From Mizuhopecten yessoensis (Eukaryota): a DNA stretch of 64,000 bases. The position numbers and the translations under genes are program-made. The DNA is taken from positions 437,513 to 501,512 of the forward strand of contig NW_018405745.1 of assembly GCF_002113885.1 (NCBI RefSeq), read 5' to 3'. Numbering within the stretch: the first letter of the stretch is position 1; every line of letters starts with the position of its first letter. A model generated the notes under the pieces. That model was given only the letters and a program-made list of their open reading frames with translations, did not search any database and was not told where the DNA came from. Positions 2,994 to 63,923 of the stretch are shown one piece after another.

Positions 2994-5900
2994 ATGGCTG
3001 CAAGTCTAGCTGCCGAACCGCAAGTCGGAGGATTTAATTTCGAAAATCATGCCAGGTAGCTTGTTTTGGTTCGCCGTTATATATACAAATGTGATTTAAG
3101 ATATCGAGTTTTGTTTCTATGTGAAATTTTGAGTTCGTTTTCATTATAAACTCACCGAACTTAGCGTTCGGCGAGTAAATACAACGATGACAAAGCAACA
3201 ACAAACGATTTACCAATGATCCTACCAATTCTTGCTTATTATTTCGTTTCAGAAATGTTTCCTTCGAGCAAAAAGGAATGCATCCACCAAAGGCTTACAA
3301 GACAGGGACTACTATCGTCGGTTTAGTCTACAAGGTTGGGCATTCAAAATGCTATGTCATTTTACAAAATATTTCGGCCCCCCCCCCCTTCCCGACCAAG
3401 GTTGGACACTACGGCACATATGGTGAATATCCTCCATTTGGGTAACAGTTACCCGTCATTAGTAACATTTTTATTACTGACATGGGGAATAAATGAAAAG
3501 AAGAGTTCTTTTAAACACTTTGAGCTAAAAGGGCGTCATTCTTTCACACAAGAAGCTATCAATTCTGATGTGTAAATTTTGGTTAAGTTGACAAACCACA
3601 TCACTGACTTTGTTCTCTTTTGACTACAGCGAGCAATCCTAAGTCATTGGGATCATCCATTGCAAATGTGACAGGTTAGCATGAATGTTTCTGTGTTCTA
3701 TTTAAAGCTTCCCCACACACACTATAAGCAATGGAGGTAATAAAGTTTGTCAGTTTTACAATATTTTGTGTACAATTGTACCCCATTTTAGTATTTATTG
3801 GCTTTTGGTGAAAGAAAGACTCCCTTTTTCCCCTAATATTTCTTTATCTTTATGTGTTTCTATTTCACTTTATTCCCCATTTCAGTGAAAACATTGTTGT
3901 TGTAAACAGGTAGCTGTTAAAGGATTATTACCTATGTGCGCTATTGTGCCCAACCTATTTCCTGAATTCCACTGGACGTTTCCCAAAGATCAAACACATT
4001 ATTTCATTAAAACTAATCCCATTTTACTTGCATTGACTTTCCCATAAAACTGAGATAGTCTGACTTTAGACTTTCAAAACGATAAATAAACAAGTTATTT
4101 TGTAAACAAGTTGAGAATTAAAAGGTTTTGAAATTAAATGCCCCTTGAATAGTATTGTAATGTCTTACAGGAGATGTCATGAGAAATGCATGTACACAGG
4201 CATTCAAACCAGAGACCTCTGAACCTCAAATGGATGCTATACCAGTACAGGTTGCTGGCGGTCGATCCAGTCAAGTTCCACTACATTTCTTCTTCCTTTT
4301 TTTTTAAGCCTTCAACCCCAAATGAATCCCAGACATTTCAGTGCCCAGTGGTTTCAGTACTGAAAAATATGATGTATGTTGCAGTATTTTTTTGTTAAGA
4401 AAAAAAATGCTGGATTATCTTAAATAATAACGTCAGCAACACAAAGGACACAAAAAGCGAACAAAGCATAAAGAAGAAACATTAGTCCAAGTGCTAAAAT
4501 AGCATCTTGGAACAGAAGCAACATTTAAGTACCAAAACATATGTACCCCTTTAAAACCCATGTTCGAATTTCCCCTTGCCAAGCTTGGTCACAGATACCA
4601 CTGTGACAGGAAAGCAAAAATGCACTGCCAGAATTAATTGGATTTTAAGCTTAATCCTGGACCTCGGAACTCTAAAAAGACACTAACTAATTGAGCTACT
4701 TGCTTGGTGGCAATTAATCAACCCAATCAGGTCTACACAAGTACCAAACACCTGAGTGTACCAAAATGTCAGTACCTGGTTGAGATATCCCTTGACTTCT
4801 TGATATTTCTAATATTGGTGAGATTCCTGTAATATATATATGATATTTGAATGCACTTAAGTTGTCTTGCAAATTTGCTTTAGTCTTTGAGCATATAATT
4901 ACCTTTGGGAGAGTCTGACAGCTCTGGAAAGTCGGTGGTTACACAAGGTCTGTAAAAGTTATCTCTTGATGTTAAACATCATATGTTAACTGTAATATAT
5001 TTAACTTGTCTCCATACTATCTTTTACAGGATGGTATTGTATTGGGTGCTGACACCAGGGCAACAGAAGGATCTGTGGTGGCAGATAAAAACTGTGCAAA
5101 GATTCACTATATAGCTGACAATATTTAGTAAGTGAAGTAGCTAGTGTACCATTGGATAGATTGGTAGCTATATTAACTATGAGAATGTTGATGAATTCAA
5201 TTGCAGAACTGAACTACTACCAATATAATTCACATGTTTAATGTATCCCATCTCATTCTTAAAATTGTAATTGTGTAGTAAACTGGAATGTGTACTAGAA
5301 CATTCTAATGAAGTCGAAATAAAATAAAATTGCTGTTAGATGAAATTTGTGTTATCATTAGTGAGAATTGATCATAAAAAAAACAGCCAGAACAGAGCTC
5401 CCAGTATTAAATCCCAAAATTTATGTTTTGCTAAAGGCTGCATTTGACTACAGAAAAGCACCTTGGACTACAAAATCGAATTACTTGATTTTTTTGACAA
5501 AGTCTGGATTTTCCCTTTAAATAACACTTCTTATATTTTATTACCGAATCAGACTTGAATTAATCAACTTCTTTCTTTATGAAAATATTGAAAATTACAA
5601 TTAATATTAAATATTAAAATTGAAGTGAAAAAATTGCCTGTACATTGAAGGGGCTGGTCGGGGAAAAAATGTCATATTTGCTAAAATGGCATACACATGT
5701 TTAAAATACCTTCTTATGAAATATGCCGATTCAAATTTTGCTGAACTTCACTCCATAAGAGTTAAAAATATAATTATATTAAAGAAATCCTAAATCGTCA
5801 CCTGACAGTCTAAAACTCTCAATTGACCCAGATCAGTGATGTAATTTTACCGAACGCGAGTCATCAACAAGGCCAAATGTAAACATCGCGGCAAAAGAAA

Positions 5901-8900
5901 AAGATGCATGCAAAAGTCATGACAGGCATGAGGTATCGATATACCGTTATATATAACAACAACACATAGGTAGGAATACTACACTTGCATCATACATGAC
6001 CTTTGAAAACAATTATTTACTGTAGTATTGCTGTCTTTTCCGCTAGTTGAGTCCGACATGGCACATGATGGCGTGCTATTGTTGTTATCTTCACTGCCTC
6101 AATTTTGAAACAACCATGTGACATATATAAATAGATATGCGCGTAATTTACGCGGGGCTTCCCCGAGATTTCAGTGGTCAAAACTGGACATTGCAAGCAG
6201 AACTTGACCATCATATTGCCGTGGTATAACGTTTGGAAGGCCAGAGAACGCATTAAGACCCATTTATTTTGTATTTTTTTCTCCGACCAGTCCCTTTAAC
6301 ATGGACACAGGCTTTGGAAATTTAAATCATAAACAGAGAAATGGTGAATTCAATAAGATCACCATGCAAACCACAGTTATGAATAAACATGCTGTTCTCA
6401 TTACTGTAAGTTCATAAATTATTTATAGAATCAAAGTTATTTTTTTTAGCTTGTATTGAATCATTTAAGAATCACATTCGGTCTTGTGTACAGGATCTCA
6501 ACGATGTGTGCTATGTTCAACATTCATGAGTCAAAGACCCCATGTTTTGATTTTTCTTGATTGTCCTACAAAATTTGAAACATCGAAGTTTGACTATATA
6601 ATTAGTTATTTACACATTCCTATTATTGCTCATAAATAGATGGAAATATTGTTTAATTCACCATATCCATAGCAATTCTGAAGTTGTGTTATAACCATTC
6701 CAGTTGCTGTGGTGCTGGTACTGCAGCGGACACAGAGATGACCACACAAATGATCTCTTCACAGCTTGAGCTCCATCGCCTAAACACGGGGCGGATACCA
6801 CGAGTGTGTACAGCCAACAGACTCCTCAAACAGATGCTTTTCAGGTAAACACATAAATTAGTTATGTTGAACAGATCTTTGTGTAAGGATGATTGCTATG
6901 AGGTTTTGTTCAACAGGAAATTTCATATCGGATGATCTTGTTCAACAGTTAAACCTCAATACTCTTTGCCTTGGAGTTGTGCATCTTTTCCTTTAATAAC
7001 ATGTTTGTCTGTTTGAATTTGAACTGTTCATTGAAAACTTTGTACACTTGATAAGTACCTAATAAATTAAATAAAGGAAGCAATTTCTCTGCTTGGTAAT
7101 TGTTACTATTAATATTTTGAATTGTAAACACCATTCTGATGACACCAAGTATATTGAAACATGTCAAAATCTCAATAGAAATTGTCAATCACCTTCATGT
7201 GAATGTCAAGTCATCTTTGCTTTGAATTGGGATAACCTTTCTGTGCTGGACTACTGAATACTGAATTCCATAAGGAATGCATCCATAGAAGGCTACTGGA
7301 CCTTAGGAAATAAAGGGACACAGACTCATTTGCTTCGTAATAAATTAGATGGTGATGCATTTGTGATCAATTTTGTATATCAACTATTCCTTTTGGAAAT
7401 GGGCTCTATTTCTGAAAATTGAACGCAGGAGTTGGGGGTATAAGTTATGTTTTCTGTGGCTTAAATTTCTGGATGAAATTGCGTGCAATAGATTAGCTTC
7501 ATTCAAATAATCAATTGAAAGTTAGACCATTGTATGATATATTGTGTTTGTATACAGGTACCATGGCAACATCAGTGCAGCACTTGTACTGGGAGGAGTC
7601 GACTCTACTGGCCCCCACCTGTACAGTGTATGGCCCCATGGCTCTACTGATAAACTACCATATGTCACCATGGGTAGGTTGTGCACCAGTGATGGGACAT
7701 ATGATGGAAATTTAACCGAAATATGGCCGAATATATGCTTCAATTTTGTAATTAGAATCAAGACTTTTTAACATAGAATTATAACCACAATAATTAAAGG
7801 TGGATAACATGCAAGCTCTTGACTTGTACATGTACTTTAATTGGTGGGTATTAGACTGATACAGATAGCCAGTGCTAAGTCCAATACCTTTTCTTCAGGC
7901 CATTTGATGATGATGATATATCTTAAGTAAAACATACAAAAGACAAGTGTTTATTGTAAAATCCTATTTTGACACTAAATAGCAAGATACTTGGAGTATA
8001 AACTTTATGTAAGTTACAGTTTTCTGGTTATGGTACTGGTTGAATTTTATTTCTCACTACATTTGTTTTTCTATGCATCTCATCACCAGTCCATTTACAG
8101 TATGCTGTTAACACCAAATAAAGATTTGTTTGGGCTCGTTAGAAAATGTGTTAACTAGAACAAGTTTTCCTTTAACTAGGTTCAGGATCCCTGGCAGCTA
8201 TGGCAACTTTTGAGGACCGCTTCAAACCAGAAATGGAGGTAATGTAATGAAATGATATAACATTAATTAAGTAAAATGCAACAAAGGAGGATATTTGTTT
8301 TCTGTTGCGTTCATAATTTCAGAATTGGTTTATTTAGCTACAAGCCATACAAATTGTTCATTTAATACACTTCAGAAGTGATCATTTATTTATCTGTAAG
8401 CCATAACCAAATAAAAGAATTCTGTCTTTGCATATTGCAGAGTTATCTTCTCTTGGGAGTAGGTATTGATTGTTACGTCATTGGTCTGTGTGAGAAAATT
8501 ACGTCGTTTTCTCAAAAATTGATGACGTTACTCTCACAAACAAGTGACGTAACAATCAATACCTGCTCCCAGGAGAAGATAACTCTACAATACGCAAAGA
8601 CGGAATAATTAATACATGGTGATGTGGGGATAAGAAAATACCACCTATGAACCTGAGGGCAAAATATAAATATTCTACATCTATTTTTTTCATTTCAAAA
8701 TAAATATTTATTGTTCACATCTTAAATACAAAGGAATCTGGTAACAGGCAAAGCCTATGAGAGCCCTCTCCTTCTACATCTGTACATGATAAGTTATTGA
8801 TAACTGATTAATTTTCTCCCAAAATGTAGATAGGTTTGTTCAAATAGGATTGATGTGGTGTCTTTAGATCATGATACAACAACTTGCAAAATATAACATT

Positions 8901-10064
8901 TTTGGGTGTTCAACTTGAGCCATCCTTGGTGCTCCAGGGGTTATGATCACTTATGCTCTCTTCACTGGAATATGTAATGGCAAAATCAAAGGCATGAAGA
9001 TAGCAATTTGACTGGACTGGTCTCTTGGGGGGAGGGGGGGGGGATGGATATCTGACAAATTGCAAGGCTGATACCTGTTCTTTGAAGATTAGAGGAGCAA
9101 CAATCCACTTTCAAATCGGTCAATTTTACTGTTTTTTGATGAACATCCAAAGATCAGGCTAGTCTACTTGTCTCATCCACAAGGCGAGGCGCACTGAGCC
9201 TTCAATTTTATCATGACATATACCACAGGGATGTAGAGAGTGCAATTAGGCGTATAATTCCTGGAGTATTGAGGATGAGCTTAAGCCTGATGAACCAGAC
9301 CTGTAATATATATATTAATGCAGATGTTGAAGTCTTTGCTAGGGCTGTAAGAAACAACATCAGACCAGTATGTCTGTTAACGTTCCACTTGAGATTTTTT
9401 TAGAAGTGTCGTTTATTCACCAGTTTTATCCTTAGTTTGAAGTTCTGCTGTTTTAATGTGCTCTGTGTTAGTGTGATCAAGTTCAAACTGTGCTGTTCAC
9501 ATTGGTACTGCTGGTGATATTTTATCATCAGTTTGAAGTTCTGCAGTTTTAATGTGCTCTGTGTTAGTGTGATCAAGGTCAAACTGTGCTGTTCACATTG
9601 TTACTGCTGGTGATATTTTATCTGCATAATTATATAGTTGATATTATACATCCAAAATACCCCCAAGATTGATCTCATTTCACAATTGAATGGCTCTTGC
9701 TTTGACATTTAGTTATCAGGTTTTTTTTTGTGGTTGATCAGTAAGCAAAAACATGAGTACATTGTAATTGAATTCATTTAATAAAATTATAACACACCAC
9801 CAGAAAATTAAATTTTACCAAGGAAGTAATTTGAGAACATAAAACTTGAGATAAAGAATCCACAAAATGGTACCCAATCTTGTATTCAGTCATGCCATTT
9901 TTATGTGTGCAGAAAGACCAGGCCATACTGTTGGTGAGGGATGCTATTGCGGCTGGTATATTTAATGATCTTGGATCAGGAAGTAATGTGGATGTTTGTG
10001 TAATAACCAAGGGCAAGGTGGAATACATGCGTCCTTATGAAGAAGCCAACGTTAAGGGATTAAG
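2994..10064 (+). CDS. PSMB7: 20S proteasome subunit beta-2 (beta type-7), exons 1-7; terminal exon not identified
   Basis: Exons 2994-3055, 3253-3334, 5030-5127, 6704-6844, 7558-7673, 8180-8238, 9913-10064, all GT-AG with matching phases. Translation [100 protein letters not shown] closely matches beta2. Catalytic Thr1 codon at 3308-3310 after a 39-aa propeptide. Confidence 0.96.
5649..6295. mobile_element. Non-autonomous TIR transposon with TTAA-type target site (Kolobok/piggyBac-like)
   Basis: Left end AGGGGCTGGTCGGGGAAAAAA versus reverse complement of right end AGGGACTGGTCGGAGAAAAAA (two mismatches); flanked by TTGA (left) and TTAA (right). Confidence 0.7.
8419..8606. mobile_element. Foldback MITE (~70-bp inverted arms)
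   Basis: ATTCTGTCTTTGCATATTGCAGAGTTATCTTCTCTTGGGAGTAGGTATTGATTGTTACGTCA pairs with TGACGTAACAATCAATACCTGCTCCCAGGAGAAGATAACTCTACAATACGCAAAGACGGAAT. Confidence 0.8.
8921..9277. mobile_element. MITE family A copy (CATCC...GGATG TIRs)
   Basis: Termini CATCCTTGGTGCTCCAGGGGTTA / TAATTCCTGGAGTATTGAGGATG; interior AAGGCTGATACCTGT.CTTTGAAGATTA shared with the copy at 36756-37090. Confidence 0.65.
9424..9622. repeat. 96-bp tandem duplication
   Basis: TTTTATC..AGTTTGAAGTTCTGC..TGTGCTGTTCACATTG.TACTGCTGGTGATA present twice, near-identical. Confidence 0.85.
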
Positions 10065-10936
10065 GTATGACTGCATTCCCATCATACATCCATTGGAGGG
10101 TTTGTAGTGTATTCATTTAAAAACAAATTCATTTATAAATAAAAAAATCAGTAACGTTCATCAGTAATTGCAATTCATATAATTACAAGTTTTGGTTTTA
10201 GTTGTCATAATAACATCAAAAAAAGTATTAATGCTTGTAACCCTTTAATACTCGATGTGTTATTAATATGTTAATATTAATTCGACCCACAAGAGGTTTT
10301 TTGGTTTGTTAATAGTATTATGAGTAAGGAATGGGCTTTAGGTCAGTTATATGTTTAAAGTATGTTTTGATATCTTAAATGCAGAACTACATTCATTTTC
10401 TTTCAGATAAAGAAAAAAGTGACTCTTCATAGTTCATCTATTAATGGAAATGGATGGTAATGTTTGAAATTGGAATGTAATTGCTGAGCTCATTCCATGG
10501 GGCATCTGGACCAGAAAGGAAATGTGGTAGAGGACCCATTCACAAGTCAACTTTGTAGTGATTGTCACTATTGGACTTAATCTTTCATTATTTCATGGAT
10601 ATCTATTAATGTGACTCGTCACAAGAACCTGAATAATGTCCTTATCCTCTCATTCTACATATATATGGATAATTTTTTTTTTAAAATTATCACTCGAAGA
10701 ACAATTGGAAAAGTAAATACTTCGCTTATATAATAACTAGTAATTGATAGATTTTATGTGGTGAACAAGCTGGAAAAAAAAAAGAAAAATAAAAAATAAT
10801 AGGTGTATGTGATATGAAATATACAATTGGTAGTGCTAATGGTATTCAGAAGTGCTACATGTCAGTCATCAGGTATTCTTCCTGACTTGTTCAATAAAGA
10901 ACTCAATTAATTGTTTACAAAAGGATATTTGTTGGT

Positions 10937-20495: not shown

Positions 20496-21019
20496 TTTCG
20501 TTCCTCAATCGGCTAGTTCTAGCCAGGCTCAATATAATCTCACGATTTCATTGGTCGACGTCGAACTCCCGGGAAATCCCTTTCGGTGAGGAACTCTGGG
20601 TAGAACACTATATATAGAAGGCGTGCTTGTTTCCATGACTGCAATGTCTTTTTTGTTTAAATTATTTTGAAACAATGCTTATAAGCTCAAATGATATCAA
20701 TTTATATCTGTACTAAATAAAAATGCATATTGCAACAATATATTTTGAATATACTTAGTTTGGAAAGAATTTAGTTGTGAAATTTGTTTAATGGTCACGT
20801 GATTTCCATCTATGACGTCAAGGAGAGTATTTCGGGAGCGGGAGATACAATATGATAGTTTAGCGTTTGACAGCAAGCTCAAAATGTATACGAAAGAACA
20901 ATTATTGACCACATATTTTCCTGAATATGAAGAAAATTAACACAGCTTAATTTCAAGTAAGAAGAGTGCGCCAAAGAAAACTTCAAGAGACTGTCACTCG
21001 TAAGGAAAGAATATAAAAC
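20496..21019. promoter_or_regulatory. Bidirectional promoter/5'UTR region PLPP <-> FAM78
   Basis: Only 524 bp between divergent ATGs; CpG-richer than flanks. Contains ATTGG (20550), GGGAAATCCC (20571-20580), GTCACGTGAT (20794-20803) and TGACGTCA (20813-20820). Confidence 0.7.
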
Positions 21020-24430: not shown

Positions 24431-24552
24431 CCATAGTGCAGGTGGGGCCTGCCCTTAACCAATTTTCTTATGATTTGTTACCCTTTGTTGGCAATTTTAA
24501 ATTTATCTTGACAAGTAATTTTAATTTCCATCCAATTTCGTATGTAATATTG

Positions 24553-53100: not shown

Positions 53101-56100
53101 ACAGACTCAGCATGCACAACCCCAACAGCAACATGCATTTAAAGGCTTTGTAACATCGGCTCAGAGCTCAACACCAACTGTAACACCTCAGTCAGCCTTA
53201 GGGTTTAAAGGGTTCATCAACCCTCAAATGTCACAGCCCACCACCCCAACACGTAAGAGCTCAGTTTCTGTATGTCTTTACTCTAGAGCATCAGACATCT
53301 GTTGGCTATCTGTTTGGTTAAAGCTGGTTACAGAGTGCACAAACATATGACACGTTGATATTGTTACAAAGTAAATCATTATATAAATAACATGTATAGT
53401 TAAAAAGTAGGGTGAGCATGTATATATCATTACAGGTAAGATGTGCACACTAAAAAGTCAAAAATAAACAGCAGCTTATTTCCCTAGTATATAGTCAAGG
53501 TATCTTAGCTTGTAGGCTTATTTTCATACATTTGAAAATGTTAATCATCAAGGAGTTATTTTCACAGAACCCTGAGATAGCATACCATAACGTGTTTGAT
53601 CACTTACATAAATACCCGGTACATTATTATTATATGCCGCTAAACGTCATTCTATAAAACCTGTTACTGGTTGATATCATCAGTTAAACAAAGGGAATCT
53701 TTTGATTGGTTCTTTATGTACAAAAAGCACCAATCCCAGCTGTTTTAACATTGAGCAGAGGTGTAGGGCTTCATTAGGTTGTTTACTGTACACATCAGAA
53801 AGAGGTATAAGGGGGATGTGTTGAGTGTACTTTTTACATTGGACCACTAGGCTATGAGAATTTCAAAACTTCTTAATAAAGACTCTTTCTGGTTTTCCAG
53901 ACAAAACATCAGGCTTTATACAAATTATATCATGAAATTTCATTCAGATATGCTCAGAATATATATTTGAAGAGGAAAATAAGCATCCCGTGCACATAGT
54001 GCTTGACATTTTACAAGTGATCTGTGTGATTTGTATTATTTTATATATCGTTTAAAATGTAACAGAGGTGTTGATAGGCACCTAATAATGTCTTCAAATG
54101 CCTGGTACATGGAATAAAAACTAGTGATTTATTACTTTAGTAAATGGGTTTTCTGGATTTCTTAAATTAATGACAGCTTATTTAGCTATTGTGGTTTAGT
54201 TTTAGAGATACAATCTTATTTTCAAGGTTTTAGGATATGTAATTGAATATATTTCAAATTATTCTGTGTTTTCTTCCCCAACAGACACAAAGTTTTTACT
54301 TTCATTTTAACTTGCAGCTATGCCAAACCTGACTGGACAGGCAGCAGGTGTGGGCCAGCCTGCATCATCTCAGTTTAAAGGTAAGGCTCCAGCTGTTTCT
54401 GTTTCTAAGGCACCTGTTCCGACAGCTTCAGTACCATTCACACCTCCTTCCGGTAATCGTCTACCAACTGCCCCTGTCCAGCCAATTGGAAGAGTTCAAG
54501 AGAGCAGACTAGGTACTGTAATACTTTTACTATGTTTCAGAAACAGATAAAATTAATTCTCTAACTGATGTGAAGATAACAAAATGTATCGAAAACTTAT
54601 CCTCCACCTTTATATAGTTAATTATCATCTGCATTGGAACTATATTGAAATCAAATGATTGCAAAATGAAGATGAACAAAATTAAACATTTTCTCAGTCA
54701 TGCTTATTATATATAAATTATAATACTCAGTACTCTGTCATGTCATTCCCAGCCCCTGTACAAGCAGTTGAGACCCCCAGATCAGGTGATTCAGAAGACA
54801 CTTTCACAAAGGGCATCATGGAGGAGGTATGTTTGATAATAGTTATATATTGACAATAATTTGATGTATTTGAATGCATAACTCCTGGTGTTCTTTGGAT
54901 AAAAACTAGGTGATCTAAAACGATGACCAAAGAAGAAAAGCAAAACTGGACACTAGTGGTTATTATAAACAAAAGAAGATTACTTTCAGATGTCATGATT
55001 CATAGATGGTAGATATACAGATAGTAAATATAGACATATGGTAGTTGTAGCTAGATAGTAGTTATAGAAAGGTAATAGTCATAGACAGGTGGTAGTTATA
55101 GATTGGTGGTAGATAAAGACAGGTAATTATAAATAAGTGTTAGTTATGGATGGGTGGTATTTATAGGTAGTAGTTATAGACAGGAGGTAGTCATGGATGG
55201 GCGGTAGTTATGGATGGATGGGTGGTAGTTATAGACAGGTGGTAGTTATGGATGGGTGGTAGTTATAGACAGGTGGTAGTTATAGACAGGAGGTAGTCAT
55301 GGATGGGCGGTAGTTATGGATGGATGGGTGGTAGTTATAGCCAGGTGGTAGATAAAGACAGGTGATAGTTATAGATAAGTGCTAGTTATAGATGGGTGGT
55401 ATTTATAGGTAGTAGTTATAGACCGGTGGTAGTTATGGATGGGTGGTAGTTATGGATGGATGGGTGGTAGTTATAGACAGGTGGTAGTTATGGATGGGTG
55501 GTAGTTATAGACAGGTGGTAGATAAAGACAGGTGCTAGTTATAGACAAGTGATAGTGGCATCCATCATCCGTTTGTCTGTCAACAATTTCTCCAGTGGAC
55601 TGGCCCAATCCTAAGATCTCATTTGCCATACTGCTTTCATTAAGAATCTTAAATATGCAGGTGAGCGATTGACTACTGATATATTTTATTGACCACTCAG
55701 TTGGCTCACTTTGAGGAGGAGATGTCAGAGTTTCGGGCCCAAACCTGTAATGGCGGAGTCCTGGTGGGCAGTCGATCGGAGATGCACCAGCTTAGAGGAA
55801 AGGTGGAAGAGTTAACCAACTTTTCATCAGAGATCATAACAACAACGAAGGTAAATTCACCGTCAATCTAGGCCTCACAAAGGCCTAGAGTTTAGTTAGC
55901 AGTTTTATTCATAGGAGTCATTAGTTCGTTTTACTAAGTGATTAGTCCCAGTGAAACTATAGGTTAGCACCCTGTTTGTCAGTCGGTCCATATTTACCAT
56001 AATTATTGAATTTGAATGAAAACTTGGGGATAGAGGTATCAGACAGTGTCACTTTCCACTCTCATTCTGTACATCAAGAGGGCTGTAGTGAGTGAGTGGT

Positions 56101-59100
56101 TAAGGCGTCTGACTGTCTACAATCACGAGCCCTCCACCACTGGGTCATGGGTTCAAGTTGTAAAAACATGTTTAATAATTGTTGTAAATATATAAAGTTT
56201 TTTTCTTAACTATTTTTTTGTCAATTGATTGTACTTTTGAAATTTGCTTGATAAAGAAACAATTGATGTGGTAGTATTAAACCTGCTTTTGTTACTTTTC
56301 TAAGGACCAGACTAAGGAGGTTGATGAGCAGAAGTCACTGTGTCTGGATTTATTTGCCATGGTGGAGGAGTGCCGTTTACGAGAGAGTCGGAATACTGAC
56401 AACAAGTACATGCATCTATTAAAAGCACGGGCCTTGGACCCTGCCAGTCTGGACCACCTCCGGCAGCTACAGCAGCAGTACCAGGTGCTTGACCAGGGCC
56501 TCAGAGACGTGGACGCCATCTTAGATCAACAGTGGAAAGAACATCAGAATAGGGACAGAAACAGAAACAAGTATGACCCGATATATATAATGTGCAGATT
56601 TAAATTATTGGTTTCAAATGTTAGCCATATATTTTTGTGGATAAGGTACCAAGACCTTACAGATTACATGTCTTACGGTTATTTTCATAAGTTTTTGACT
56701 TATTGATGTTTTACTGCTTACCCACATTGCTGACAGTATAAATAAAATATCATAAATGTAATTAGTCTTGAGATCTTGAGTCTGCACATAGCTTTCTGGG
56801 TTTGTCATGTGTTTCATTGTCATTTCAATTCTCTTTGTCAGGATCAAGGCGCCGACAACAGATGTGATGTATCGCGTCCTGAAGAGTAACAGCTCTCTGA
56901 TACGCAACCAAAAGTCTAACCTCAACAACTTGGAAAAGAAATTGAAGGAGCTTAAACTCTACAATAAAACTTCAGCATGGCAACACTCCAATTCTTCAAA
57001 TAATGAATCAAGGTATGTAATGAAATTTTAAATTAGTAAATCTGTTTGATTTATGAACATAAGGTTGGATACTGGTAAAACACATACAATATGAAATCAG
57101 TACAGGCATTTATAGAGTGTTTATGTATAATTTGCCAAAGCCTATTGTGGTTAAGTAAATTCTATTTATTGAAATTCATTTGAGGTATATACAATGAATC
57201 TTAACTTTGGAATACAATCAAATCCCCTATCATGACTACAGGTTCATCCTTGCTGTACCAAGCAACCTTACATGTAAGGTGATCCAGATTCTACAGGTTT
57301 CACCTGGATTTTGTAAACTTGACCAGCATACATGTTATTACTCTACACTTAGTGTGTAGTCACTGTAGTGTGTATTTGGTTAGCTTCTGCCATGGTGATT
57401 CTTCCGTTGTCATCTGTCCTCTGTCAACATTTGCATTAGCAACATCGACTCTTGAGCAGAATTTTACCACAATCTGATGACAGCATCATCAACCCATGGG
57501 GTTCAATGTTATATACAAAAAGGGGCTCGCCCAACTGGAATCTAATCAGTGTTGGTATCAAAAGCTATTAAATTAGCAGGTTTGCTTAAAATGACCTCTC
57601 CCCAACTTACTGTGCAGATTTCTTTGAAACCGAGTAATCCTTAGCTCATGTTGATCTTGAGTCAATTTGATTGATTTGCTATAAACTTCGTTTCATTAAG
57701 AGATTTCAAAGAGTTTATAGTTGTAGCATCCTTAGCCCATTAAGATAAAAAATTACTAGTATACAAATACAGTCAAACTTTGGTGATTCTCACTTTGCTG
57801 GACCATCAGGAAATATTGGAAACATTGAGACTTTTTGGCCCCACCCCTAAGCCCGGGGGGTCAGCCCCAACATTTGTACAATTTTGAATCCCTGCCTTCC
57901 ATGAATGCTTCCGACCAAATATGATTAGTATCCATGGCATAGTTCTACAAAAGTAGTCGTTTATAGCAATATAGCCGAATTGCCCCCTTTTGGCCCCGCG
58001 CCCCCCCCCCCAAAATATGATTGTTAATTGATGGAATGCATTTAATTTGAAATCTATATATACAAAATTATGTTTCATGTATATATACACTAGTATAGTT
58101 AGCAAGCAAGTTTAGGTGTTAAAATGACCCAGGTATATTTGGATATTCAAACAGGTACTGGTAATTGTTTTACCTCAATTTATTTGTTGTCATTAGTTGC
58201 AATTCAATTTGACACATCAAGTTTTGAATATTTGAAGTTTGATTTATGGCAGTTTGACTGTATGGGGGGTGACCCTCCTTAAGAGCTGAAAGAAGAAATA
58301 AGAGATTACATCAAACTGACCAGCATTTTCCTTATACAATGCTGGTCATGGCACATTACAATTTTCTTAGGTTGACAGATATGAGTAAAACCATTTGTTT
58401 TTCAAATATTTGAGAAATGAAGAAAACAAATTTTTGTTACCAGGGGTAAGTGGAAGTAATTTCAAATATTATATATGTTTCATAAACCTTAAAAACATTC
58501 TCCTATCTTCTTTCTTAACAGAGATTTAGAGTTGTCTACCCTGGCAGATAGTCTGTTGGATGTGGATGATACTCCAAAGCCTAGCCTCTCCTCCACACAG
58601 ATCAGCAATAAAGCTCCAAGTCCGGAGAAACAAGCACGCCTTCGTGACCACCTAGCTAGACGTGCAGTACCCAGAATTAAGTCCACCAGGCCAGGTAGGA
58701 ACAAAAGTAGAAAATATCTACAATGCATCATAGCATTTTCTATGAACTCAATGTAATTGCATACTGTATCAGAATTATATTTGAGATTTTAGTTATAAGA
58801 GAGAGTTGACATGTATGACATGATATTACAATTTAATAACATTAGAATTATGTTCGGAAACTTTGGAATTTTTCTGATTCATAGGTGAAACCAAAACCTT
58901 ACATGTGGCAAAGTTTTTGGAAAATGGTATGTTAATTTGTTGCTTCCAGAGAATTTGTCAATGTCCCGTATAGCTGCTGTAGACCGACGGAGGTATGACC
59001 CAGAAGAGACTGTTGTGGCTCATGCACCGGAGCAAAACTTCCAAAAACATATAGGTATGTGTGTAGCCATTAACAGGGGCTGCTGTTGCATATACTGGTT

Positions 59101-62100
59101 GGAATGATCCAGGTGTCATGAAATTATTCTGTAGATACATAAACAAGCTTTTGGGCTGGAAGAGAGCAGACGTTAACATGTGTGAATCAACCTGATATCG
59201 ATTCAGCATTGAAACAGTTGAAACAGCTGTGGACAGAGATTTACTCATTTTGAGAAGAAGTAGGAGATTAAAAGATATCTTCCTTTTAGATCAGACAGAC
59301 GCAAATTTCAATGGAAATGTTCCGATATAGTAATTAGTTTAAATTTTACATGTTTTGTTTGGAATTATACAGCAACATGCTTTTCCCGTTCAAAGTTATT
59401 CACCTCGTGTGACTTTCTTTATGAAATTTTGACCTTAGAATAAAGGTTGTCATGGTGTTTCAGCTGAGAGAGGGTCCAAACATTATGGCACTTCGTTCAG
59501 ACAACCAACCGGAAATAAAATGTCTTCTGGTGGCATGAATACAGCGGGAAACGTTGGTGGTCAGATGTTTATGCCAAGTGGTCAGATGTCAGCCCTGTCC
59601 ACCATACAAGGCAAACTTCCCATGACTATAACTGGACAGTCTGGAACAAGGGATGTGAGCAGGCATAATATGGTAATTATGCTCTATTGTCAAAACAGGT
59701 TAACAGTGTTACTAAGTCAAAATGTGGTAAAGTAATGTTTTATAGACAAAACATGGTAAAAAATGTACCTTTTCCAGTCAAATTATGGAAACAATTCCTT
59801 CTTATGTGCATGATTATAAATTAAAGATTTTATATGAAATACCCTAAGGCCTTGTAGCTTAAATACTCTTAATAATCTTTTGTTGTCAAAATATGATCGA
59901 TAATGTTCTGTAAAGCAGTCAAAACATGGTTACAAAGTGATAGATTTCTTTTTATCAAAATATGATAAATAATTTTCCTGAGGTCTACATTCAGAAAAAT
60001 ATGCCTCCCAACTGAACTATGTTTCCCCTAAACAATAAGTGCAACAACTAAAACATTGAATAACTAACCCATCCACATACACACAACTGGATTAACTTGC
60101 ATTATTGACTATTTACTTTGACATTTTTTACTATCTTAATGGTGTTTATTTGTAGCCCCCTTTGAGTGGTAACAACAACCTTCCATCCAAGTACACATTC
60201 AGTGCTCCTTCAGCTGTCCCAGGTATGTATAACTCAACCATATTTGTGATGTAACAACACTTTTCATTGGTTAATAATATTGTGTTATTAGCTGACCACC
60301 AGGTCCGAAGGACCAAGGTGAGCTTATGCCATACTGTGGCGTCCGTCGTCTTTACGTCAACAATTTCTTCAAACGACTTCTACTTCTTCTTAACCACTGA
60401 TTGGAATTTAAATAAATTTGACTGGAAACATCCCTAGGTAGTGGAGATTCAAAATTGTACAAATGGTGGGTCAGACCCCCAAGGGGGCTGAGGGTCGAGG
60501 CCAAAAGGGGGCAATTCGGCTATATTGCTATAAACGACTTCTTCTGTACAATTATGCCATTGATACCAATCATATTTGGTCGAAAGCATTCATAGGAGGC
60601 AGGGATTCAAAAATGCACAAATGGTGGGGCTGACCCGCTGAGCTAAGGGGTGGGGCCAAAAAAAATATATTACTTGGAAATGGTTGAGATCCCCACCATA
60701 TAACCATACAATTGCTGAGTATAAAGAGAAGAATGCACATTTGCTTCCAGGATGGCCCTATTAAACCATTATCAATATTATCTAAAATAATCGCTGGTCA
60801 AGTGGCGCAGTGGATTGCACACTTGCCTTTCACCAAGGCGGCCGGGGTTCTATTCCCTGATTGGACGTAAAAGGTATGGGGTCAATCGCCCGACCACGTG
60901 GGATTCTCCGGGTACTCTGGTTTCCTTCCACATGAAGATCCCCCAGGCGCTAACAGTCAGGACAACAAGAGTGATTAATATAAGTTGAACTAACTTGTTT
61001 CATAATGGTTGTTACATAAATGAAGTTTAAATTCATATTTACATTTGATATGATTTGTTTGATAATTGTTGTAAAATGATTAAAGTTGATTTATATTATG
61101 ATCTGAAATTCACTGATTTTACCTTAAAAACATGGATTATAGAATATTTCATTTAATATTACTAAAGAAATATTTTTTTCATTAAAAATCTTCCTGTAAG
61201 AGATTATAAGACAGAAGGTTGTAGTATAATTGTCTTGCTGCCACAAAGTAGTGGAAGCAGACTAAGGTGGTGCTTTTCTGGCGACAGCGGCGTTAACATT
61301 AAGTTTTTGCGTTTAAGTTAGTTTCACTGAAAGCCTAAGTGCTAGACCAACCAAACTTGGACCACAGATGCATCTTAGGTAGTACATCTCAACCCATGCA
61401 TTGAATGATGGATGTGGCCTACCTTTTATGGTCCATTGACTTTGTCAGCATCTCCATCAACATTAAGTTTTTGCGTTTAAGTTAGTTTATCTGATATGTA
61501 CATTGATGGTCAAAGCAGGGCACAGGCAAGACATATCAATCTTAATGGCTTGTTTAGTTTGTGTTGCCTTTTACTAAAGTCGTACAAAGGACCACTTGTC
61601 TATGTTAAAGGGGGACTGAAGAACCTAGGCCACATAGTTGTGGAAGACATAACACCACCCTCATCCACAGGATATGAAGAAGAAGATGAGGAAGACGATG
61701 AAGAGGATGAAGAGGATGACACATATGATGATGACGATGATGATGATTATGAGGAAGAGGAAGATGAGAATGGTATTGGATTTGGATCCCAATATACCAT
61801 GACAGAACAAGCCAATGAGAACATTCTTGTTAAAGGTGAATATTTAAACAGCGGTAATATCAGATAACCTATGTAACATTTTGGAACAGAGGAGACAATA
61901 TTACTTCTTTGAAAGTCTGGAGGTTTCTATACTTTAGCTTGAAAGAGGAATATTTCTTTTGGTTTGGGGTTATTACATGCAGGTGACAAGTAAAGGTCAA
62001 GGATGCTATAAATAGACTAACATCAGGAATCTGAACAAATGTTATTTTTCAGCACTATAGTTGGTCACATGCTCCCAACCAGGGGCTTATTCAGGAAACA

Positions 62101-63923
62101 TATTTTGGTTACACAGTGTTGACTTTGGCTGTGCTTGGTAGGGCAAACATTTGACCTATGGTTTTAGTAGAGAGATGATAGATAATGAATAATGTTGAAC
62201 ACATGCAAGAAGAAACTTGGAAAAGAACAAATAAATCAAAAGTCTTAAACTATAATTAGGGCCCCGTATCGGAGATACGGGTGCCCTATAGTAATCACTC
62301 TAGTAGTCAGTCTGTCTGTCCACAAATTTTGTTTCTGGCTGATAACTTTGGTATTTATTGACCGATGTACATGAAACTTGGTCAATATGTTCAGTTCACA
62401 AAAATACACATTGAGGTAAAAGTCAAGGTCAAAGGTTAAGGTCATTAGGTTCAAAGGTCAAGGTCAAATTTTACATCTTTTCACTGATGAACATTTTATT
62501 ATGACATTATGAAGCAAAGTTGGTCGGAATTAAAGAATAAATCAACTGTTAGCCCAGCAAATATGGAGGTGGAAGGAAGCAAGTCTCACATCATAGTACT
62601 GTAAAATGTATATTTTGCTTCCTTGCGCTTTTTTTTAAAAGTCTAAATGTCAAACGTCAAGCTCAGCTATATGGGCAGATTGCTTCTTGATGATTATGTG
62701 GGATATATTGCCACAAGGCGGGGCCCTTACTGACCTGTCAGTGTTCTAGTTGAATTAAGATGCCTTTTTTATTTTCCAGGCCATAGCACTTCACTGCCTA
62801 AGGCTGTTGGATTTAATATTGCTCAGACATCTGGAAATGTAAACAAAAACTTGTTTGGATCTGCTGTCACCAATAAATCTGTGTCAGGTACTGTAGCTAC
62901 TACAGTGAGTCCAATGGTGGCAACATTTGGTGGAAAACCAGGAGAATTCAGCTTCAGCAGTGGAACACAGTCCCAGACCTCCTTCACCTTTGGTGGCAAT
63001 GCTGGTGGGTCTGCATTTGCATTTGGTGGAACCTCTAAACCAGAAACTGGAGTTAAAACACCAGGTGTAGCATCAGCCAGTACCACCAAGTCTGACCAAT
63101 CAGCTTTCTCCGTGTCTGCCACAAAACGTCCAGCAGTAGCTAAGGACACGGGTTTCAACTTCGGAGGGCAAATGGCTAAAAACACAGACAGGCCAAGTGA
63201 GGAAGTATCAACTATCAGTCCCCTGTTATTGGAAGGTAGGTATCAAAACATGCAGGCCACACCTGTATAACCAGGTGAGCCACAGCCTCTTTGATATTTG
63301 ATATTTTTAACCCCCCTACCCCCTCCACTTAGCAGAAGGGTATATAATAATCGCTTGAACAGTGCATGCATGTATGTGTGTATCCATCCTCCATCCTTAC
63401 TGAGAAGCTAGTGTACAAGACAACTCACAAGTCCTTCCAAAAGAAATCATAGGTTGGTTTAAGTTCAAACCTAATACAATTTTGGTGATAACGGTAAAAG
63501 TTTAAGGGGTCAAAGGTTACACTTTACAACATTTGAAGTAAAAAGGTTCTATAGCAGATATCTCCTGAACTTATCCACAGATTAGTTTATATGGTACAGT
63601 ATGGTCACATTAATTTCTTTCCTCTGGTAAGATTATTGTGGTCAAGATTAAAGAGTCACACCTGTCCACTAATCATGTGGGAGGGATTCTCTTTTGTTTT
63701 AATTTCTTGCCTTTATTTAAAGGAAAAGGGATCATTATCAATAGTGGTTTTGAAATAGTTACATTTAACATTCTTTAACATTGTTTGAATGCTTTGTCAG
63801 CCCTGTCTGAGGAGGAAGTTCCCAGAGTACCAACGAGTGGTACAGCAGCTGCAGGGTTTTCATTCACTAATCCTGTACCACAATCAAAACCTGATGTCTC
63901 GGCCGCAGGAACTCTCAAACAAG
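41145..63923 (+). CDS. NUP214: Nuclear pore complex protein Nup214 (5' part, 23 exons; continues beyond window)
   Basis: Exons 41145-41186, 44386-44512, 45585-45811, 46274-46466, 47209-47340, 48680-48783, 48958-49055, 49929-49998, 51016-51142, 51786-51938, 52260-53252, 54318-54512, 54753-54826, 55701-55850, 56305-56570, 56842-57012, 58522-58694, 58950-59054, 59464-59672, 60156-60222, ~61590-61835 (acceptor ambiguous), 62780-63235, 63801-63923; phases consistent. Beta-propeller motifs PERDVK/DFKF, VCWSPRGKQLVVG, WNLDDSARAELP, LLLSTDGVL, then an FG-rich region, a coiled coil (GIMEELAHFEEEM..) and further FG repeats. Confidence 0.93.
42420..42635 (-). mobile_element. tRNA-derived SINE with V-domain-like core
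   Basis: Reverse complement of the 60793 element: tRNA-like head (CAGTGGATAGCGCAC..GGTTTGATTCCC) and TCTCCGGGTACTCCTGTTTCCTC core. Confidence 0.75.
42915..43275 (+). mobile_element. 5'-truncated HINE-like element
   Basis: Degenerate internal units plus 3' CAGGTGAGCAATACTGGCCATCTGGACCTCTTGTTT. Confidence 0.7.
44695..45268 (+). mobile_element. HINE-like element with a different ~147-bp internal repeat
   Basis: CATGGTCCTGAC at ~44695, 44842, 44987, 45141; 3' CAGGTGACC..AGGCCCATGGGCCTCTTGTT. Confidence 0.75.
46684..46772. repeat. Near-perfect palindrome (~43-bp arms, 3-nt loop), probably MITE-derived
   Basis: TATATGGGGCAAAGAAGTAATTCCAACAGTGTGGACAAGTTTA-GCC-TAAACTTGTCCCCACTGTTGGAATTACGTCTTTGCCCCATATA, 2 mismatches. 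Confidence 0.85.
48061..48612. mobile_element. Degenerate MITE family A copy (reverse interior, with insertion)
   Basis: Termini resemble family A (..TCCCGGGGTTACG.. / CAGGGGTGCAGAGA..); interior TGTGGATG and ATCTTCAAAAG in reverse orientation. Confidence 0.45.
50512..50640. repeat. 19-bp minisatellite x~6
   Basis: GGTCAATGTACAGTGTATA repeated. Confidence 0.9.
55005..55556. repeat. ~17-bp degenerate minisatellite
   Basis: GTAGTTATAGACAGGTG / GTAGTTATGGATGGGTG units. Confidence 0.9.
56080..56160 (+). mobile_element. Truncated tRNA-like SINE head
   Basis: A-box-like GTGAGTGAGTGGTTAAGGCG and B-box-like GGGTTCAAGT, without a full cloverleaf. Confidence 0.45.
57836..58012 (-). mobile_element. 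Fragment of HINE internal repeat (inverse of 60480-60660)
   Basis: TTGGCCCCACCCCT..CAGCCCC..ATTTGTACAATTTTGAATCCCTGCC..ATAGCAATATAGCCGAATTGCCCCCTTTTGGCC is the reverse complement of sequence at 60500-60660. Confidence 0.75.
60288..60660 (+). mobile_element. HINE-like element 5' part
   Basis: TTAGCTGACC..GGTCC-GAA-GGACC hairpin, GTGAGCTTATGCC, GTCCGTCGTC, then two internal units. Confidence 0.75.
60793..61025 (+). mobile_element. tRNA-derived SINE with V-domain-like core
   Basis: A box TGGCGCAGTGG, B box GGTTCTATTCCC, core TCTCCGGGTACTCTGGTTTCCTTCCAC; second copy at 42420-42635. Confidence 0.78.
62256..62751 (+). mobile_element. HINE-like element, separate family
   Basis: Sub-terminal inverted repeats AGGGCCCCG / CGGGGCCCT, 5' hairpin CCGTATC..GATACGG, GTCT microsatellite, 3' hairpin ACTGAC-CT-GTCAGT, ending CTAGTT. 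Confidence 0.72.

What the first reader, a model, noticed from the sequence alone, without database searches (positions are those of the whole stretch)
2994..63923. Five-gene block PSMB7-PLPP6/7-FAM78-NEK6/7-NUP214 joins two human 9q33-34 gene neighbourhoods
Seen: order PSMB7(+), PLPP(-), FAM78(+), NEK(-), NUP214(+) with no other gene recognised between them. Recalled knowledge: in human, NEK6 and PSMB7 are tail-to-tail neighbours on 9q33.3, and NUP214-FAM78A-PLPP7 are consecutive on 9q34.13. Paralogues NEK7 and FAM78B are on 1q; both regions belong to the MHC-paralogous set. Inference: all five genes were tightly linked in the protostome-deuterostome ancestor, and the vertebrate lineage later split the block in two. 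Such retention suggests shared cis-regulation.
Basis: partly seen in the sequence, partly recalled or inferred. Interest (0 to 1): 0.75.

Follow-up and report, generated by a model that had tools for sequence, protein, structure and literature searches.

The report
Scallop five-gene block, partly ancient
The link to NEK is so far seen only in molluscs, and the link to PSMB7 only in this scallop.

Summary
The window is Mizuhopecten yessoensis scaffold C2418:437513-501512. It carries PSMB7(+), a PLPP6/7-type PAP2 phosphatase(-), FAM78(+), NEK6/7(-) and NUP214(+). One exon of each gene was tested and each is single copy. No other domain, Rfam RNA or tRNA was found between the genes. The 494-aa "ORF" at 15.9-17.3 kb is a 35-bp minisatellite. 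Each of the three N's lies in an intron between consecutive exons of one gene, so the N's are not misjoins.

The block consists of two head-to-head pairs plus PSMB7. The pairs are PLPP|FAM78 (524 bp between ATGs) and NEK|NUP214 (2.2 kb), each around a CpG-rich island.
- PLPP|FAM78 is head-to-head in two scallops, two limpets, a chiton, an annelid and amphioxus, and the two genes are neighbours in mammals.
- The limpet Patella has <-NEK NUP214-> <-FAM78 PLPP->, which is the human 9q34.13 order plus NEK.
- The scallop order differs from that by inversion of one pair.
- In amphioxus and Saccoglossus, NUP214's head-to-head partner is VAMP4, not NEK.

NUP214-FAM78-PLPP is therefore ancestral. NEK|NUP214 is mollusc-only so far. 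PSMB7 adjacency is seen only here. Any split predates vertebrates. This is a new example of a known kind, conserved microsynteny.

The parts
2994..10080 (+). PSMB7 (proteasome beta2-type subunit). Coding exons lie at about 2994-3056, 3260-3330, 5040-5125, 6693-6845, 7550-7672, 8176-8238 and 9895-10080. The last C-terminal exon was not located.
   Evidence: Translations were read. Pfam Proteasome hits. Best PDB match is beta type-7. The exon tested is single copy. The mature N-terminal Thr motif (TTIVG) is visible in exon 2.
15898..17322 (.). 35-bp minisatellite of about 40 copies. It creates stop-free frames up to 494 aa on both strands and is not a gene.
   Evidence: Tandem Repeats Finder. 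The long ORF gives only sub-threshold Pfam noise.
18517..20495 (-). PLPP6/7-type PAP2 lipid phosphatase with two coding exons: exon 1 at about 20190-20495 and exon 2 at 18517 to about 18900. All three PAP2 catalytic motifs are intact. The N at 20088 lies in its intron.
   Evidence: Pfam PAP2 at E 1e-20. The annotated product P0283 is 'phospholipid phosphatase 6-like' on a contig of 534,495 bases, the same length as C2418. Exon 2 is single copy. Motifs were read.
20496..21019 (.). Divergent intergenic region shared by PLPP and FAM78, a putative bidirectional promoter. It is 524 bp between the two ATGs.
   Evidence: CpG o/e is 1.08 against 0.39 for the window. One continuous 75.6% blastn block, 20182-21227, aligns to Ylistrum while the neighbouring introns do not align. 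In six other species the gap between called gene ends is 0.5-1.1 kb.
21020..22832 (+). FAM78 (pro-orthologue of FAM78A/B) with three coding exons: 21020-21208, 21516-21632 and 22245-22832.
   Evidence: tblastn with P0001, P0004, P0011 and P0027. Homologues are named FAM78A/B across Bilateria. The exon tested is single copy.
31773..38966 (-). NEK6/7 kinase with eight coding exons, at about 38787-38966, 38270-38350, 37800-37920, 37360-37470, 36140-36240, 33850-33950, 32817-32930 and 31773-32051. The N at 35913 lies in the intron between exons 5 and 6.
   Evidence: Translations were read. Pkinase hits. All PDB hits below E 1e-6 contain NEK7 sequence. Exon 1 is single copy. Exons 5-8 are collinear in Ylistrum.
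38967..41144 (.). Divergent intergenic region between the NEK and NUP214 start codons (2,178 bp), a putative shared promoter region.
   Evidence: CpG o/e is 0.86 overall and 1.44-1.49 at 40501-41250. The same head-to-head pairing occurs in Patella, 9.5 kb apart.
41145..64000 (+). NUP214. Exon 1 is at about 41145-41186. Propeller exons lie between 44386 and 51988. There is an FG-rich exon at 52157-53347, coiled-coil exons at 55680-57028 and further FG exons. The gene runs off the window and continues to about C2418:506,150. The N at 41648 lies in intron 1.
   Evidence: PDB matches to the NUP214 N-terminal domain and to residues 765-845 of human NUP214. Pfam Beta-prop_NUP159_NUP214. 83% identical to Pecten maximus Nup214-like. 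FG exons continue in L012. The exon tested is single copy.

Best explanation
The window is a gene-dense stretch of the Yesso scallop genome holding five conserved single-copy genes. It is best read as two divergently transcribed gene pairs plus one convergent neighbour. The pairs are PLPP6/7|FAM78 and NEK6/7|NUP214; the neighbour is PSMB7.

Each pair surrounds a short intergenic region that is not CpG-depleted. That region probably acts as a shared, unmethylated, bidirectional promoter, so a breakpoint inside it would damage both genes. This is inferred and was not shown here. The pairs therefore behave as units, while the tail-to-tail spacers between units (8-9 kb, CpG-poor, repeat-rich) are free to break.

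The parts of the block differ in age.
- PLPP|FAM78 is bilaterian-wide.
- NUP214-> <-FAM78 PLPP-> occurs in the limpet Patella and, by recalled strand orientation, in mammals. It is also seen loosely in an acorn worm, so it goes back to the protostome-deuterostome ancestor.
- NEK|NUP214 is shared by a bivalve and a gastropod, so it goes back at least to their common ancestor.
- The scallop order (<-PLPP FAM78-> <-NEK NUP214->) is derived from the limpet/human-like order by inversion of one pair.
- PSMB7 next to PLPP is documented only in this scallop.

PSMB7 and NEK are adjacent in human and two genes apart here. This makes it likely that all five genes lay in one chromosomal neighbourhood in the bilaterian ancestor. 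A tight five-gene block is not shown, and any separation happened before vertebrates arose.
For: - Gene identities and copy number.
- Pair geometry and CpG: ATG-to-ATG distances of 524 bp and 2,178 bp. CpG o/e is 1.08 and 0.86 (peak 1.49) in the divergent regions, against 0.39 window-wide and 0.23-0.29 in the convergent spacers.
- Promoter-region conservation between scallop genera where introns do not align.
- PLPP(-)|FAM78(+) with 0.5-1.1 kb between called genes in Ylistrum, Lottia (11), Owenia (12), Liolophura (14), Branchiostoma belcheri in two assemblies (30) and Patella (62). Orthology of the PAP2 neighbour was checked by tblastn of both scallop exons.
- Patella locus L023: NEK exon 1 at 537-367(-), 63% identical to the scallop exon, E 9e-21. 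Then NUP214(+) at 10001-38891, FAM78(-) at 41388-43815 and PLPP(+) at 44427-46990.
- Saccoglossus scaffold GL010821.1: NUP214(+) at 112,568-150,544 and FAM78(-) at 184,977-189,031, convergent and 34 kb apart.
- Mammalian neighbourhoods from the literature, and co-downregulation of Fam78a and Ppapdc3 in mouse muscle (PMC9731977).
- General precedent: conserved head-to-head pairs, Irimia et al. 2012.
Against: - No expression, transcription-start or methylation data were obtained for this locus.
- NEK|NUP214 are 9.5 kb apart in Patella, which is loose for a shared promoter.
- PLPP was not found within 10 kb of FAM78 in Saccoglossus or Bugula.
- Lottia, a limpet like Patella, has a GH10 gene rather than NUP214 within 10 kb downstream of FAM78.
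- Only 10 kb of flank could be seen per locus. Genes lying 10-100 kb away, including NEK and PSMB7 in deuterostomes, would have been missed.
- The inversion scenario rests on two mollusc arrangements and on human gene orientations recalled from memory.
Confidence: 0.7

Rival explanations
1. All five genes formed one tight block in the protostome-deuterostome ancestor, held together by shared cis-regulation, and the vertebrate lineage split it into the 9q33.3 and 9q34.13 neighbourhoods.
For: - The two human clusters are interleaved in the scallop: PSMB7 [PLPP FAM78] NEK NUP214. Neither cluster can have arrived as a unit.
- The chance of five named genes being consecutive is about 4e-11.
- Four of the five are also contiguous in a gastropod.
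- FAM78 and NUP214 share a chromosome or scaffold in Mytilus, Pinctada, Haliotis, Tubulanus, Antedon, Acanthaster, amphioxus and Saccoglossus.
Against: - Amphioxus and Saccoglossus have VAMP4, not NEK, head-to-head with NUP214. No NEK or PSMB7 exon lies within 10 kb of FAM78 or NUP214 in any deuterostome locus. A split, if there was one, is therefore not vertebrate-specific.
- Beyond the PLPP|FAM78 pair the neighbours differ in Lottia, Owenia, the chiton and amphioxus.
- In Owenia, FAM78 and NUP214 are on contigs of different length (40.8 and 37.5 Mb).
- Order and orientation between the pairs differ between scallop and limpet, which argues against block-wide regulatory constraint.
Confidence: 0.2
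2. Secondary assembly in molluscs. Only NUP214-FAM78-PLPP is ancestral. NEK, and in scallops PSMB7, were brought next to it by rearrangements within the chromosome in the molluscan lineage. The resemblance to the human NEK6-PSMB7 pair reflects only shared membership of one ancestral chromosome.
For: - NEK|NUP214 was seen only in molluscs (this window).
- Two deuterostome invertebrates share a different NUP214 partner, VAMP4.
- PSMB7 next to PLPP was seen in one species only.
Against: - It needs two independent coincidences: NEK landing beside NUP214, and PSMB7 landing two genes from NEK although the two are immediate neighbours in human. That is about 0.005 for the latter alone under random order.
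- No outgroup polarises VAMP4|NUP214 against NEK|NUP214. The deuterostome state could equally be the derived one.
Confidence: 0.25
3. Assembly artefact. The block is created by misjoins at the N positions of a short-read scaffold.
For: The assembly is fragmented (82,659 contigs) and the window holds three N's.
Against: - Each N is a single base inside an intron, flanked by consecutive exons of one gene in the right order and strand.
- An independent assembly of another scallop genus shows the same PLPP(-) FAM78(+) NEK(-) order, with collinear non-coding matches.
- Patella shows NEK next to NUP214 independently.
Confidence: 0.02

Closest known systems
Conserved ancient microsyntenic pairs (Irimia et al. 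2012, Genome Res 22:2356, PMC3514665), coregulation class with divergent 5'-5' orientation
   Same: The genes in each pair are unrelated. They are kept adjacent and head-to-head across phyla with a very short intergenic distance. This holds for PLPP|FAM78 in at least seven sampled invertebrate species and, as neighbours, in mammals. There is also a hint of co-regulation in mouse.
   Different: Whether this pair is among the roughly 600 listed pairs could not be checked, because the supplement is not held. None of the gene names appears in the main text. No developmental regulator is involved, so this is not a GRB/bystander case.
Human 9q34.13 neighbourhood AIF1L-NUP214-FAM78A-PLPP7
   Same: Patella has the same three genes in the same order. 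Their relative orientation matches the human one as recalled from memory, which was not checked here. Amphioxus has an AIF-1 gene near NUP214. The PLPP|FAM78 pair is the same as in the scallop.
   Different: In the scallop NEK6/7 lies between FAM78 and NUP214, and NUP214 is inverted relative to FAM78. Neither AIF-1 nor a synaptobrevin gene is on the 534-kb scaffold.
Human 9q33.3 pair NEK6-PSMB7
   Same: Both orthologues lie in the same 36 kb of scallop DNA. They are convergently oriented, as recalled for human.
   Different: They are not adjacent in the scallop, because the PLPP|FAM78 pair lies between them. Adjacency could not be examined in any other invertebrate.
Bilaterian ancestral linkage groups and the conserved scallop karyotype (macrosynteny)
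   Same: Orthologues of one human chromosome arm lie on one scaffold or chromosome in many invertebrates.
   Different: Macrosynteny predicts a shared chromosome, not adjacency. The contiguity seen here goes beyond that prediction.

Membership tests
PSMB7 / proteasome beta2 subunit | Proteasome (Ntn-hydrolase) domain, and closest to beta2-type rather than other beta subunits | tested here: met
   Pfam PF00227 on exons. The PDB top hits are all 'beta type-7' (E 1.6e-16). Yeast Pup1 scores 1.7e-12 and beta type-10 scores 7.5e-7.
PSMB7 / proteasome beta2 subunit | Catalytic N-terminal threonine exposed after propeptide cleavage (G|TT motif) | tested here: met
   Exon 2 translation contains the ...KTG-TTIVG... 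junction. This was read directly and not assayed.
NEK6/NEK7 kinases | Kinase domain with the short NEK6/7-type N-terminal extension, closest to NEK6/7 among kinases | tested here: met
   Exon 1: every PDB hit at E < 1e-6 contains NEK7 sequence, with a best E of 1.6e-13. Pkinase on exons. Exon 1 is single copy in the genome.
NUP214 / Nup159 nucleoporins | N-terminal Nup159/214 beta-propeller, central coiled coil and FG-repeat tail | tested here: met
   Pfam PF16755. NUP214 N-terminal domain at residues 192-234. Residues 765-845 of human NUP214, E 3e-10. FG-rich exons at 52157-53347, 62734-63267 and in L012.
FAM78 | Full-length similarity to proteins named FAM78A/B; one pro-orthologue in invertebrates | tested here: met
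   E 1e-127 to Ylistrum FAM78B-like. A profile search reaches vertebrate FAM78A/B, amphioxus, hemichordates and echinoderms. The exon tested is unique in the genome. No Pfam family exists for it.
PLPP6/PLPP7 (PAP2 lipid phosphatases) | PAP2 domain; closest named relatives are PLPP6/7; catalytic motifs KxxxxxxRP, PSGH and SRxxxxxHxxxD | tested here: met
   PAP2 at E 1e-20. Named relatives are PLPP6 or presqualene diphosphate phosphatase. All three motifs are present in exon 2. Full-length vertebrate PLPP7 (about 271 aa) and PLPP6 (about 295 aa) fall outside the search's length window; only short or partial vertebrate PLPP6 entries appeared. The PLPP6-versus-PLPP7 assignment therefore rests on synteny with FAM78.
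Conserved ancient microsyntenic pair (coregulated, divergent) | Adjacency of the same two unrelated genes in distant phyla | tested here: met
   PLPP|FAM78 in Bivalvia, Gastropoda, Polyplacophora, Annelida and Cephalochordata, and in mammals by literature. Absent within 10 kb in Bugula and Saccoglossus.
Conserved ancient microsyntenic pair (coregulated, divergent) | Conserved 5'-5' orientation and short intergenic distance | tested here: met
   The pair is head-to-head in every positive species. The gaps between called genes are 492, 856, 679, 1057, 657/640 and 611 bp, and 524 bp between the ATGs here.
Conserved ancient microsyntenic pair (coregulated, divergent) | Correlated expression of the two genes | not testable with these tools
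The only evidence is a literature hint: Fam78a and Ppapdc3 fall together in exercised mouse muscle (PMC9731977).
   Contiguity of all five was seen only in this scallop, and of four in Patella. The deuterostome loci show NUP214 with VAMP4 and FAM78 with PLPP, with no NEK or PSMB7 within 10 kb. The view is limited to 10 kb flanks.

The most novel reading that the evidence does not exclude
The bilaterian ancestor carried one compact neighbourhood built from divergent-promoter gene pairs: PSMB7-> <-NEK6/7 NUP214-> <-FAM78 PLPP->, with VAMP4 and AIF1 close by. On this reading the limpet arrangement is the two human neighbourhoods (9q33.3 and 9q34.13) still fused. The human 1q genes VAMP4, FAM78B and NEK7 would be the sister copy left by genome duplication, and the scallop would be one inversion away from the ancestral order. 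This would give a gene-by-gene reconstruction of a piece of the pre-duplication chordate chromosome.
Probability: 0.3. Interest if true: 0.5.

Novelty: new member of a known kind. Interest (0 to 1): 0.4.

Why it matters
Conserved microsynteny of unrelated genes is one of the few handles on ancient cis-regulatory constraint. This locus offers a clean test case. The PLPP|FAM78 pair has stayed head-to-head, less than about 1 kb apart, in molluscs, an annelid and amphioxus, and the two genes remain neighbours in mammals. FAM78 itself has no assigned Pfam domain. The locus also shows, in one place, which junctions are constrained (the divergent promoters) and which are not (the convergent spacers, where scallop and limpet differ by an inversion). 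Finally, it supplies a concrete and cheaply testable hypothesis about how the human 9q33-q34 and 1q paralogous regions derive from one ancestral neighbourhood. It is not a new kind of biology. Hundreds of such pairs are known, and the strongest form of the claim remains unproven.

Tried and rejected
- The large ORFs at 15.8-17.4 kb (up to 494 aa) looked like a sixth gene. They are frames through a 35-bp minisatellite.
- The ten longest spacer ORFs have no Pfam hit. Rfam and tRNA scans are empty.
- Misjoin at the N's is rejected on exon order and on the independent scallop and limpet assemblies.
- The protein-atlas look-ups of two flanking exons (a Ser-rich exon upstream and the Tudor-domain exon) gave nothing usable.
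- The supplements of Irimia 2012 and Simakov 2013 are not held. Four full-text searches that combined these gene names with synteny terms, or with each other's names, found no paper describing the block. A fifth search returned only unrelated papers.
- Acanthaster FAM78 was not on record. Antedon NUP214 is flanked only by retroelement ORFs.
- The amphioxus FAM78 and NUP214 loci come from different assemblies and do not overlap, so their distance is unknown.
- AIF-1 and synaptobrevin genes are not on the scallop scaffold.
Because of this and the length window of the word search, full-length NEK6/7 and PSMB7 orthologues could not be retrieved as anchors.
- No contig taken for human was fetched. 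Human gene order comes from cited papers and from memory, and is marked as such. The 2090-aa hit P0170, possibly human NUP214, was left alone.
- The N's were not filled.

Full report
**What the window is.** The window is G000:C2418:437513-501512 of a 988-Mb assembly in 82,659 contigs. The annotated PLPP product of this scaffold is 'phospholipid phosphatase 6-like [Mizuhopecten yessoensis]'. It sits on a contig of 534,495 bases, which is exactly the length of C2418. The organism is therefore the Yesso scallop. The window has 36% G+C, is strongly CpG-depleted (o/e 0.39) and contains three single-base N's at 20088, 35913 and 41648.

**Checking the observation.** I read stop-to-stop translations on both strands and tested exons separately by reference.

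- **PSMB7(+)** starts at 2994, the finding's first base. Seven coding exons were located up to about 10080, and the last C-terminal exon was not found. Exons hit Pfam Proteasome. The exon at 9898-10080 matches 'Proteasome subunit beta type-7' best (E 1.6e-16), ahead of yeast Pup1 and of beta type-10.
- **PLPP(-)** has two exons (18517 to about 18900, and about 20190 to 20495). It scores PAP2 at E 1e-20, all three PAP2 catalytic motifs are intact, and its named relatives are PLPP6 or presqualene diphosphate phosphatase.
- **FAM78(+)** has three exons defined by tblastn (21020-21208, 21516-21632, 22245-22829). It is 94% identical to a Ylistrum protein named FAM78B-like. A profile search reaches vertebrate FAM78A and FAM78B.
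- **NEK(-)** has eight coding exons from 38966 down to 31776. Every PDB hit for exon 1 below E 1e-6 contains NEK7 sequence: nine NEK7 entries and one PKR-NEK7 fusion.
- **NUP214(+)** starts at 41145. It matches the NUP214 N-terminal propeller, residues 765-845 of human NUP214 (E 3e-10) and Pfam Beta-prop_NUP159_NUP214. It carries FG-rich exons and continues about 4.6 kb past the window.
- **Copy number.** One exon of each gene was searched against the whole genome, and each is unique there. Each gene is thus the only candidate orthologue.

**Is anything else between the genes?** The striking ORF cluster at 15.8-17.4 kb (up to 494 aa, both strands) is a 35-bp minisatellite of about 40 copies. 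The ten longest spacer ORFs have no Pfam hit. There is no Rfam family and no tRNA. Within the reach of these tools the five genes are consecutive.

**Misjoin at the N's.** Each N lies in an intron: the PLPP intron, the NEK intron between exons 5 and 6, and NUP214 intron 1. In each case the exons on either side are consecutive exons of one conserved protein, in the right order and strand, which a misjoin would not produce. An independent assembly of another scallop genus, Ylistrum balloti, also has PLPP(-) FAM78(+) NEK(-), with collinear coding and non-coding matches.

**Anatomy.** The block is two divergent pairs plus PSMB7.

- PLPP and FAM78 start 524 bp apart; NEK and NUP214 start 2,178 bp apart.
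- These two intergenic regions, together with the 5' end of PSMB7, are the places in the window where CpG is not depleted. CpG o/e is 1.08 for PLPP|FAM78 and 0.86 for NEK|NUP214 (peak 1.49 at 40501-41000).
- The tail-to-tail spacers PSMB7-PLPP and FAM78-NEK are 8-9 kb long, CpG-poor (o/e 0.29 and 0.23) and full of tandem repeats.
- Between Mizuhopecten and Ylistrum, one unbroken 75.6% alignment covers PLPP exon 1, the whole spacer and FAM78 exon 1 (20182-21227). The adjoining introns do not align.

I infer, but have not shown, that each pair shares an unmethylated bidirectional promoter region.

**Comparative evidence.** I anchored on FAM78 and NUP214 orthologues and read the called genes within 10 kb on each side. 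The identity of neighbours was checked by tblastn with the scallop exons.

- **PLPP(-)|FAM78(+)** is head-to-head, with 0.5-1.1 kb between called genes, in Ylistrum, Lottia, the chiton Liolophura, the annelid Owenia, two assemblies of Branchiostoma belcheri, and Patella. Cattle list NUP214, FAM78A and PLPP7 consecutively (PMC12171144). The pair was not seen within 10 kb in Bugula or Saccoglossus.
- **Patella caerulea** is the key locus. NEK exon 1 (63% identical to the scallop exon, E 9e-21) lies on the minus strand 9.5 kb upstream of NUP214(+). NUP214 is followed by FAM78(-) and PLPP(+). The locus tags of FAM78 and NUP214 are consecutive. That is <-NEK NUP214-> <-FAM78 PLPP->, which is the mammalian NUP214-FAM78A-PLPP7 order plus NEK. 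Human strand orientations are from my memory. The scallop order <-PLPP FAM78-> <-NEK NUP214-> differs by inversion of one pair.
- **Saccoglossus** has NUP214(+) and FAM78(-) convergent on one scaffold, 34 kb apart.
- **Amphioxus and Saccoglossus** both have a synaptobrevin gene head-to-head with NUP214. Its best PDB match is VAMP4. Amphioxus also has an AIF-1 gene next to it, recalling AIF1L-NUP214 in mammals.
- **No NEK or PSMB7 exon** lies in any deuterostome locus examined.
- **Antedon** shows only retroelement ORFs beside NUP214.
- **Other neighbours.** Beyond the PLPP|FAM78 pair the neighbours differ in Lottia (GH10), Owenia (Tim17, peroxiredoxin) and amphioxus.
- **Shared chromosomes.** In Owenia the contig lengths differ.

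**Reading.**

- NUP214-FAM78-PLPP is shared by a gastropod and mammals, and loosely by a hemichordate, so it is ancestral for Bilateria.
- PLPP|FAM78 is the constrained core.
- NEK|NUP214 is shared by a bivalve and a gastropod, so it is at least as old as their common ancestor. Deuterostome invertebrates share a different partner for NUP214, and no outgroup was available to say which state is older.
- FAM78-NEK adjacency is scallop-specific, and PSMB7-PLPP adjacency was documented only here.
- One argument remains for an ancestral five-gene neighbourhood. PSMB7 and NEK are neighbours in human (PMC12056214) and lie two genes apart in the scallop. This is improbable by chance, about 0.005 under random order on one chromosome.
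- That argues for proximity, not for a tight block. If there was a separation, it predates vertebrates.
- Block-wide cis-regulation is not needed. The between-pair junctions are the ones that vary.

**Flanks.** Upstream on the scaffold lie a Tudor-domain gene(-), an NmrA-like gene(+) and a RasGEF exon(+). The RasGEF exon might belong to RAPGEF1, a 9q34.13 gene in human from memory, but I could not establish that. Downstream, after the end of NUP214, a TDP-43 N-terminal exon(-) lies near the scaffold end. AIF-1 and synaptobrevin genes are elsewhere in the genome.

**Novelty.** Four full-text searches that combined these gene names with synteny terms, or with each other's names, found no paper describing the block. 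A fifth search returned only unrelated papers. The supplementary pair lists of the two systematic surveys are not held, so prior listing of PLPP7-FAM78A cannot be excluded. The phenomenon itself, conserved divergent gene pairs, is well described (PMC3514665). I rate this a new member of a known kind, of moderate interest.

**Limits.**

- Only 10 kb of flank was visible per locus.
- The budgets for locus and homologue look-ups are spent.
- There are no expression data.
- Human gene orientations and the chromosome 1 paralogue positions are recalled, not tested.
- No human contig was fetched, and the N's were left as they are.

Noticed in passing
window 15898-17322: A 35-bp minisatellite of about 40 copies (81% matches). 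It keeps several frames open on both strands and produces spurious ORFs of up to 494 aa.
   Followed up: yes
window 33999-35230: A 46-bp minisatellite (26.7 copies) in the NEK intron directly 5' of exon 6 in transcript direction. Its unit resembles the sequence abutting that exon. I confirmed only the repeat.
   Followed up: partly
window 11001-11570, 24643-25466 and 35512-35902: Copies of a 145-bp tandem-repeat family, probably one scallop satellite or SINE-like element. The copies lie in spacers and introns. Two further 146-bp arrays at 24038-24432 and 44695-45152 have consensus units that look different from this family and from each other.
   Followed up: no
window 251-1750, with L016:387-1457(-) and L011:8422-9370(-): A Tudor-domain gene on the minus strand lies upstream of PSMB7 (Pfam TUDOR, E 5e-6). 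A region that is not CpG-depleted lies at window 251-1750. It may be that gene's promoter, which would make Tudor|PSMB7 a third divergent pair. The gene's identity was not resolved.
   Followed up: partly
L009:2156-2434(+), L020:6651-7586(+), L015:2536-3111(+): Between about 20 and 80 kb upstream of the window lie a RasGEF-domain exon, a long Ser/Pro-rich exon and an NmrA-like gene. The RasGEF gene could be RAPGEF1, which lies near PLPP7 in human (from memory). That would extend the collinearity, but it is unproven.
   Followed up: partly
L024:6072-8879(-) and L026:4788-9317(-): A VAMP4-like synaptobrevin gene is head-to-head with NUP214 in both Branchiostoma belcheri and Saccoglossus kowalevskii. 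This is a candidate deuterostome-wide divergent pair. Human VAMP4 lies on 1q (from memory), in the region paralogous to 9q34.
   Followed up: partly
L024:1-2538(+): Amphioxus has an AIF-1 family gene two genes upstream of NUP214, echoing the mammalian AIF1L-NUP214 neighbourhood.
   Followed up: no
window 18520-18927(-): The scallop PLPP keeps all three PAP2 catalytic motifs, as PLPP6 does, while sitting next to FAM78 in the position PLPP7 has in mammals.
   Followed up: partly
window 26353-26628, 26984-27558 and 28328-28579: Collinear blocks 65-71% identical between Mizuhopecten and Ylistrum lie in the FAM78-NEK spacer. They could be long 3' UTRs or conserved non-coding elements.
   Followed up: no
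L018:2112-2546(-): An exon encoding a TDP-43 N-terminal domain (Pfam E 3e-6) lies about 30 kb beyond the window, close to the scaffold end.
   Followed up: no
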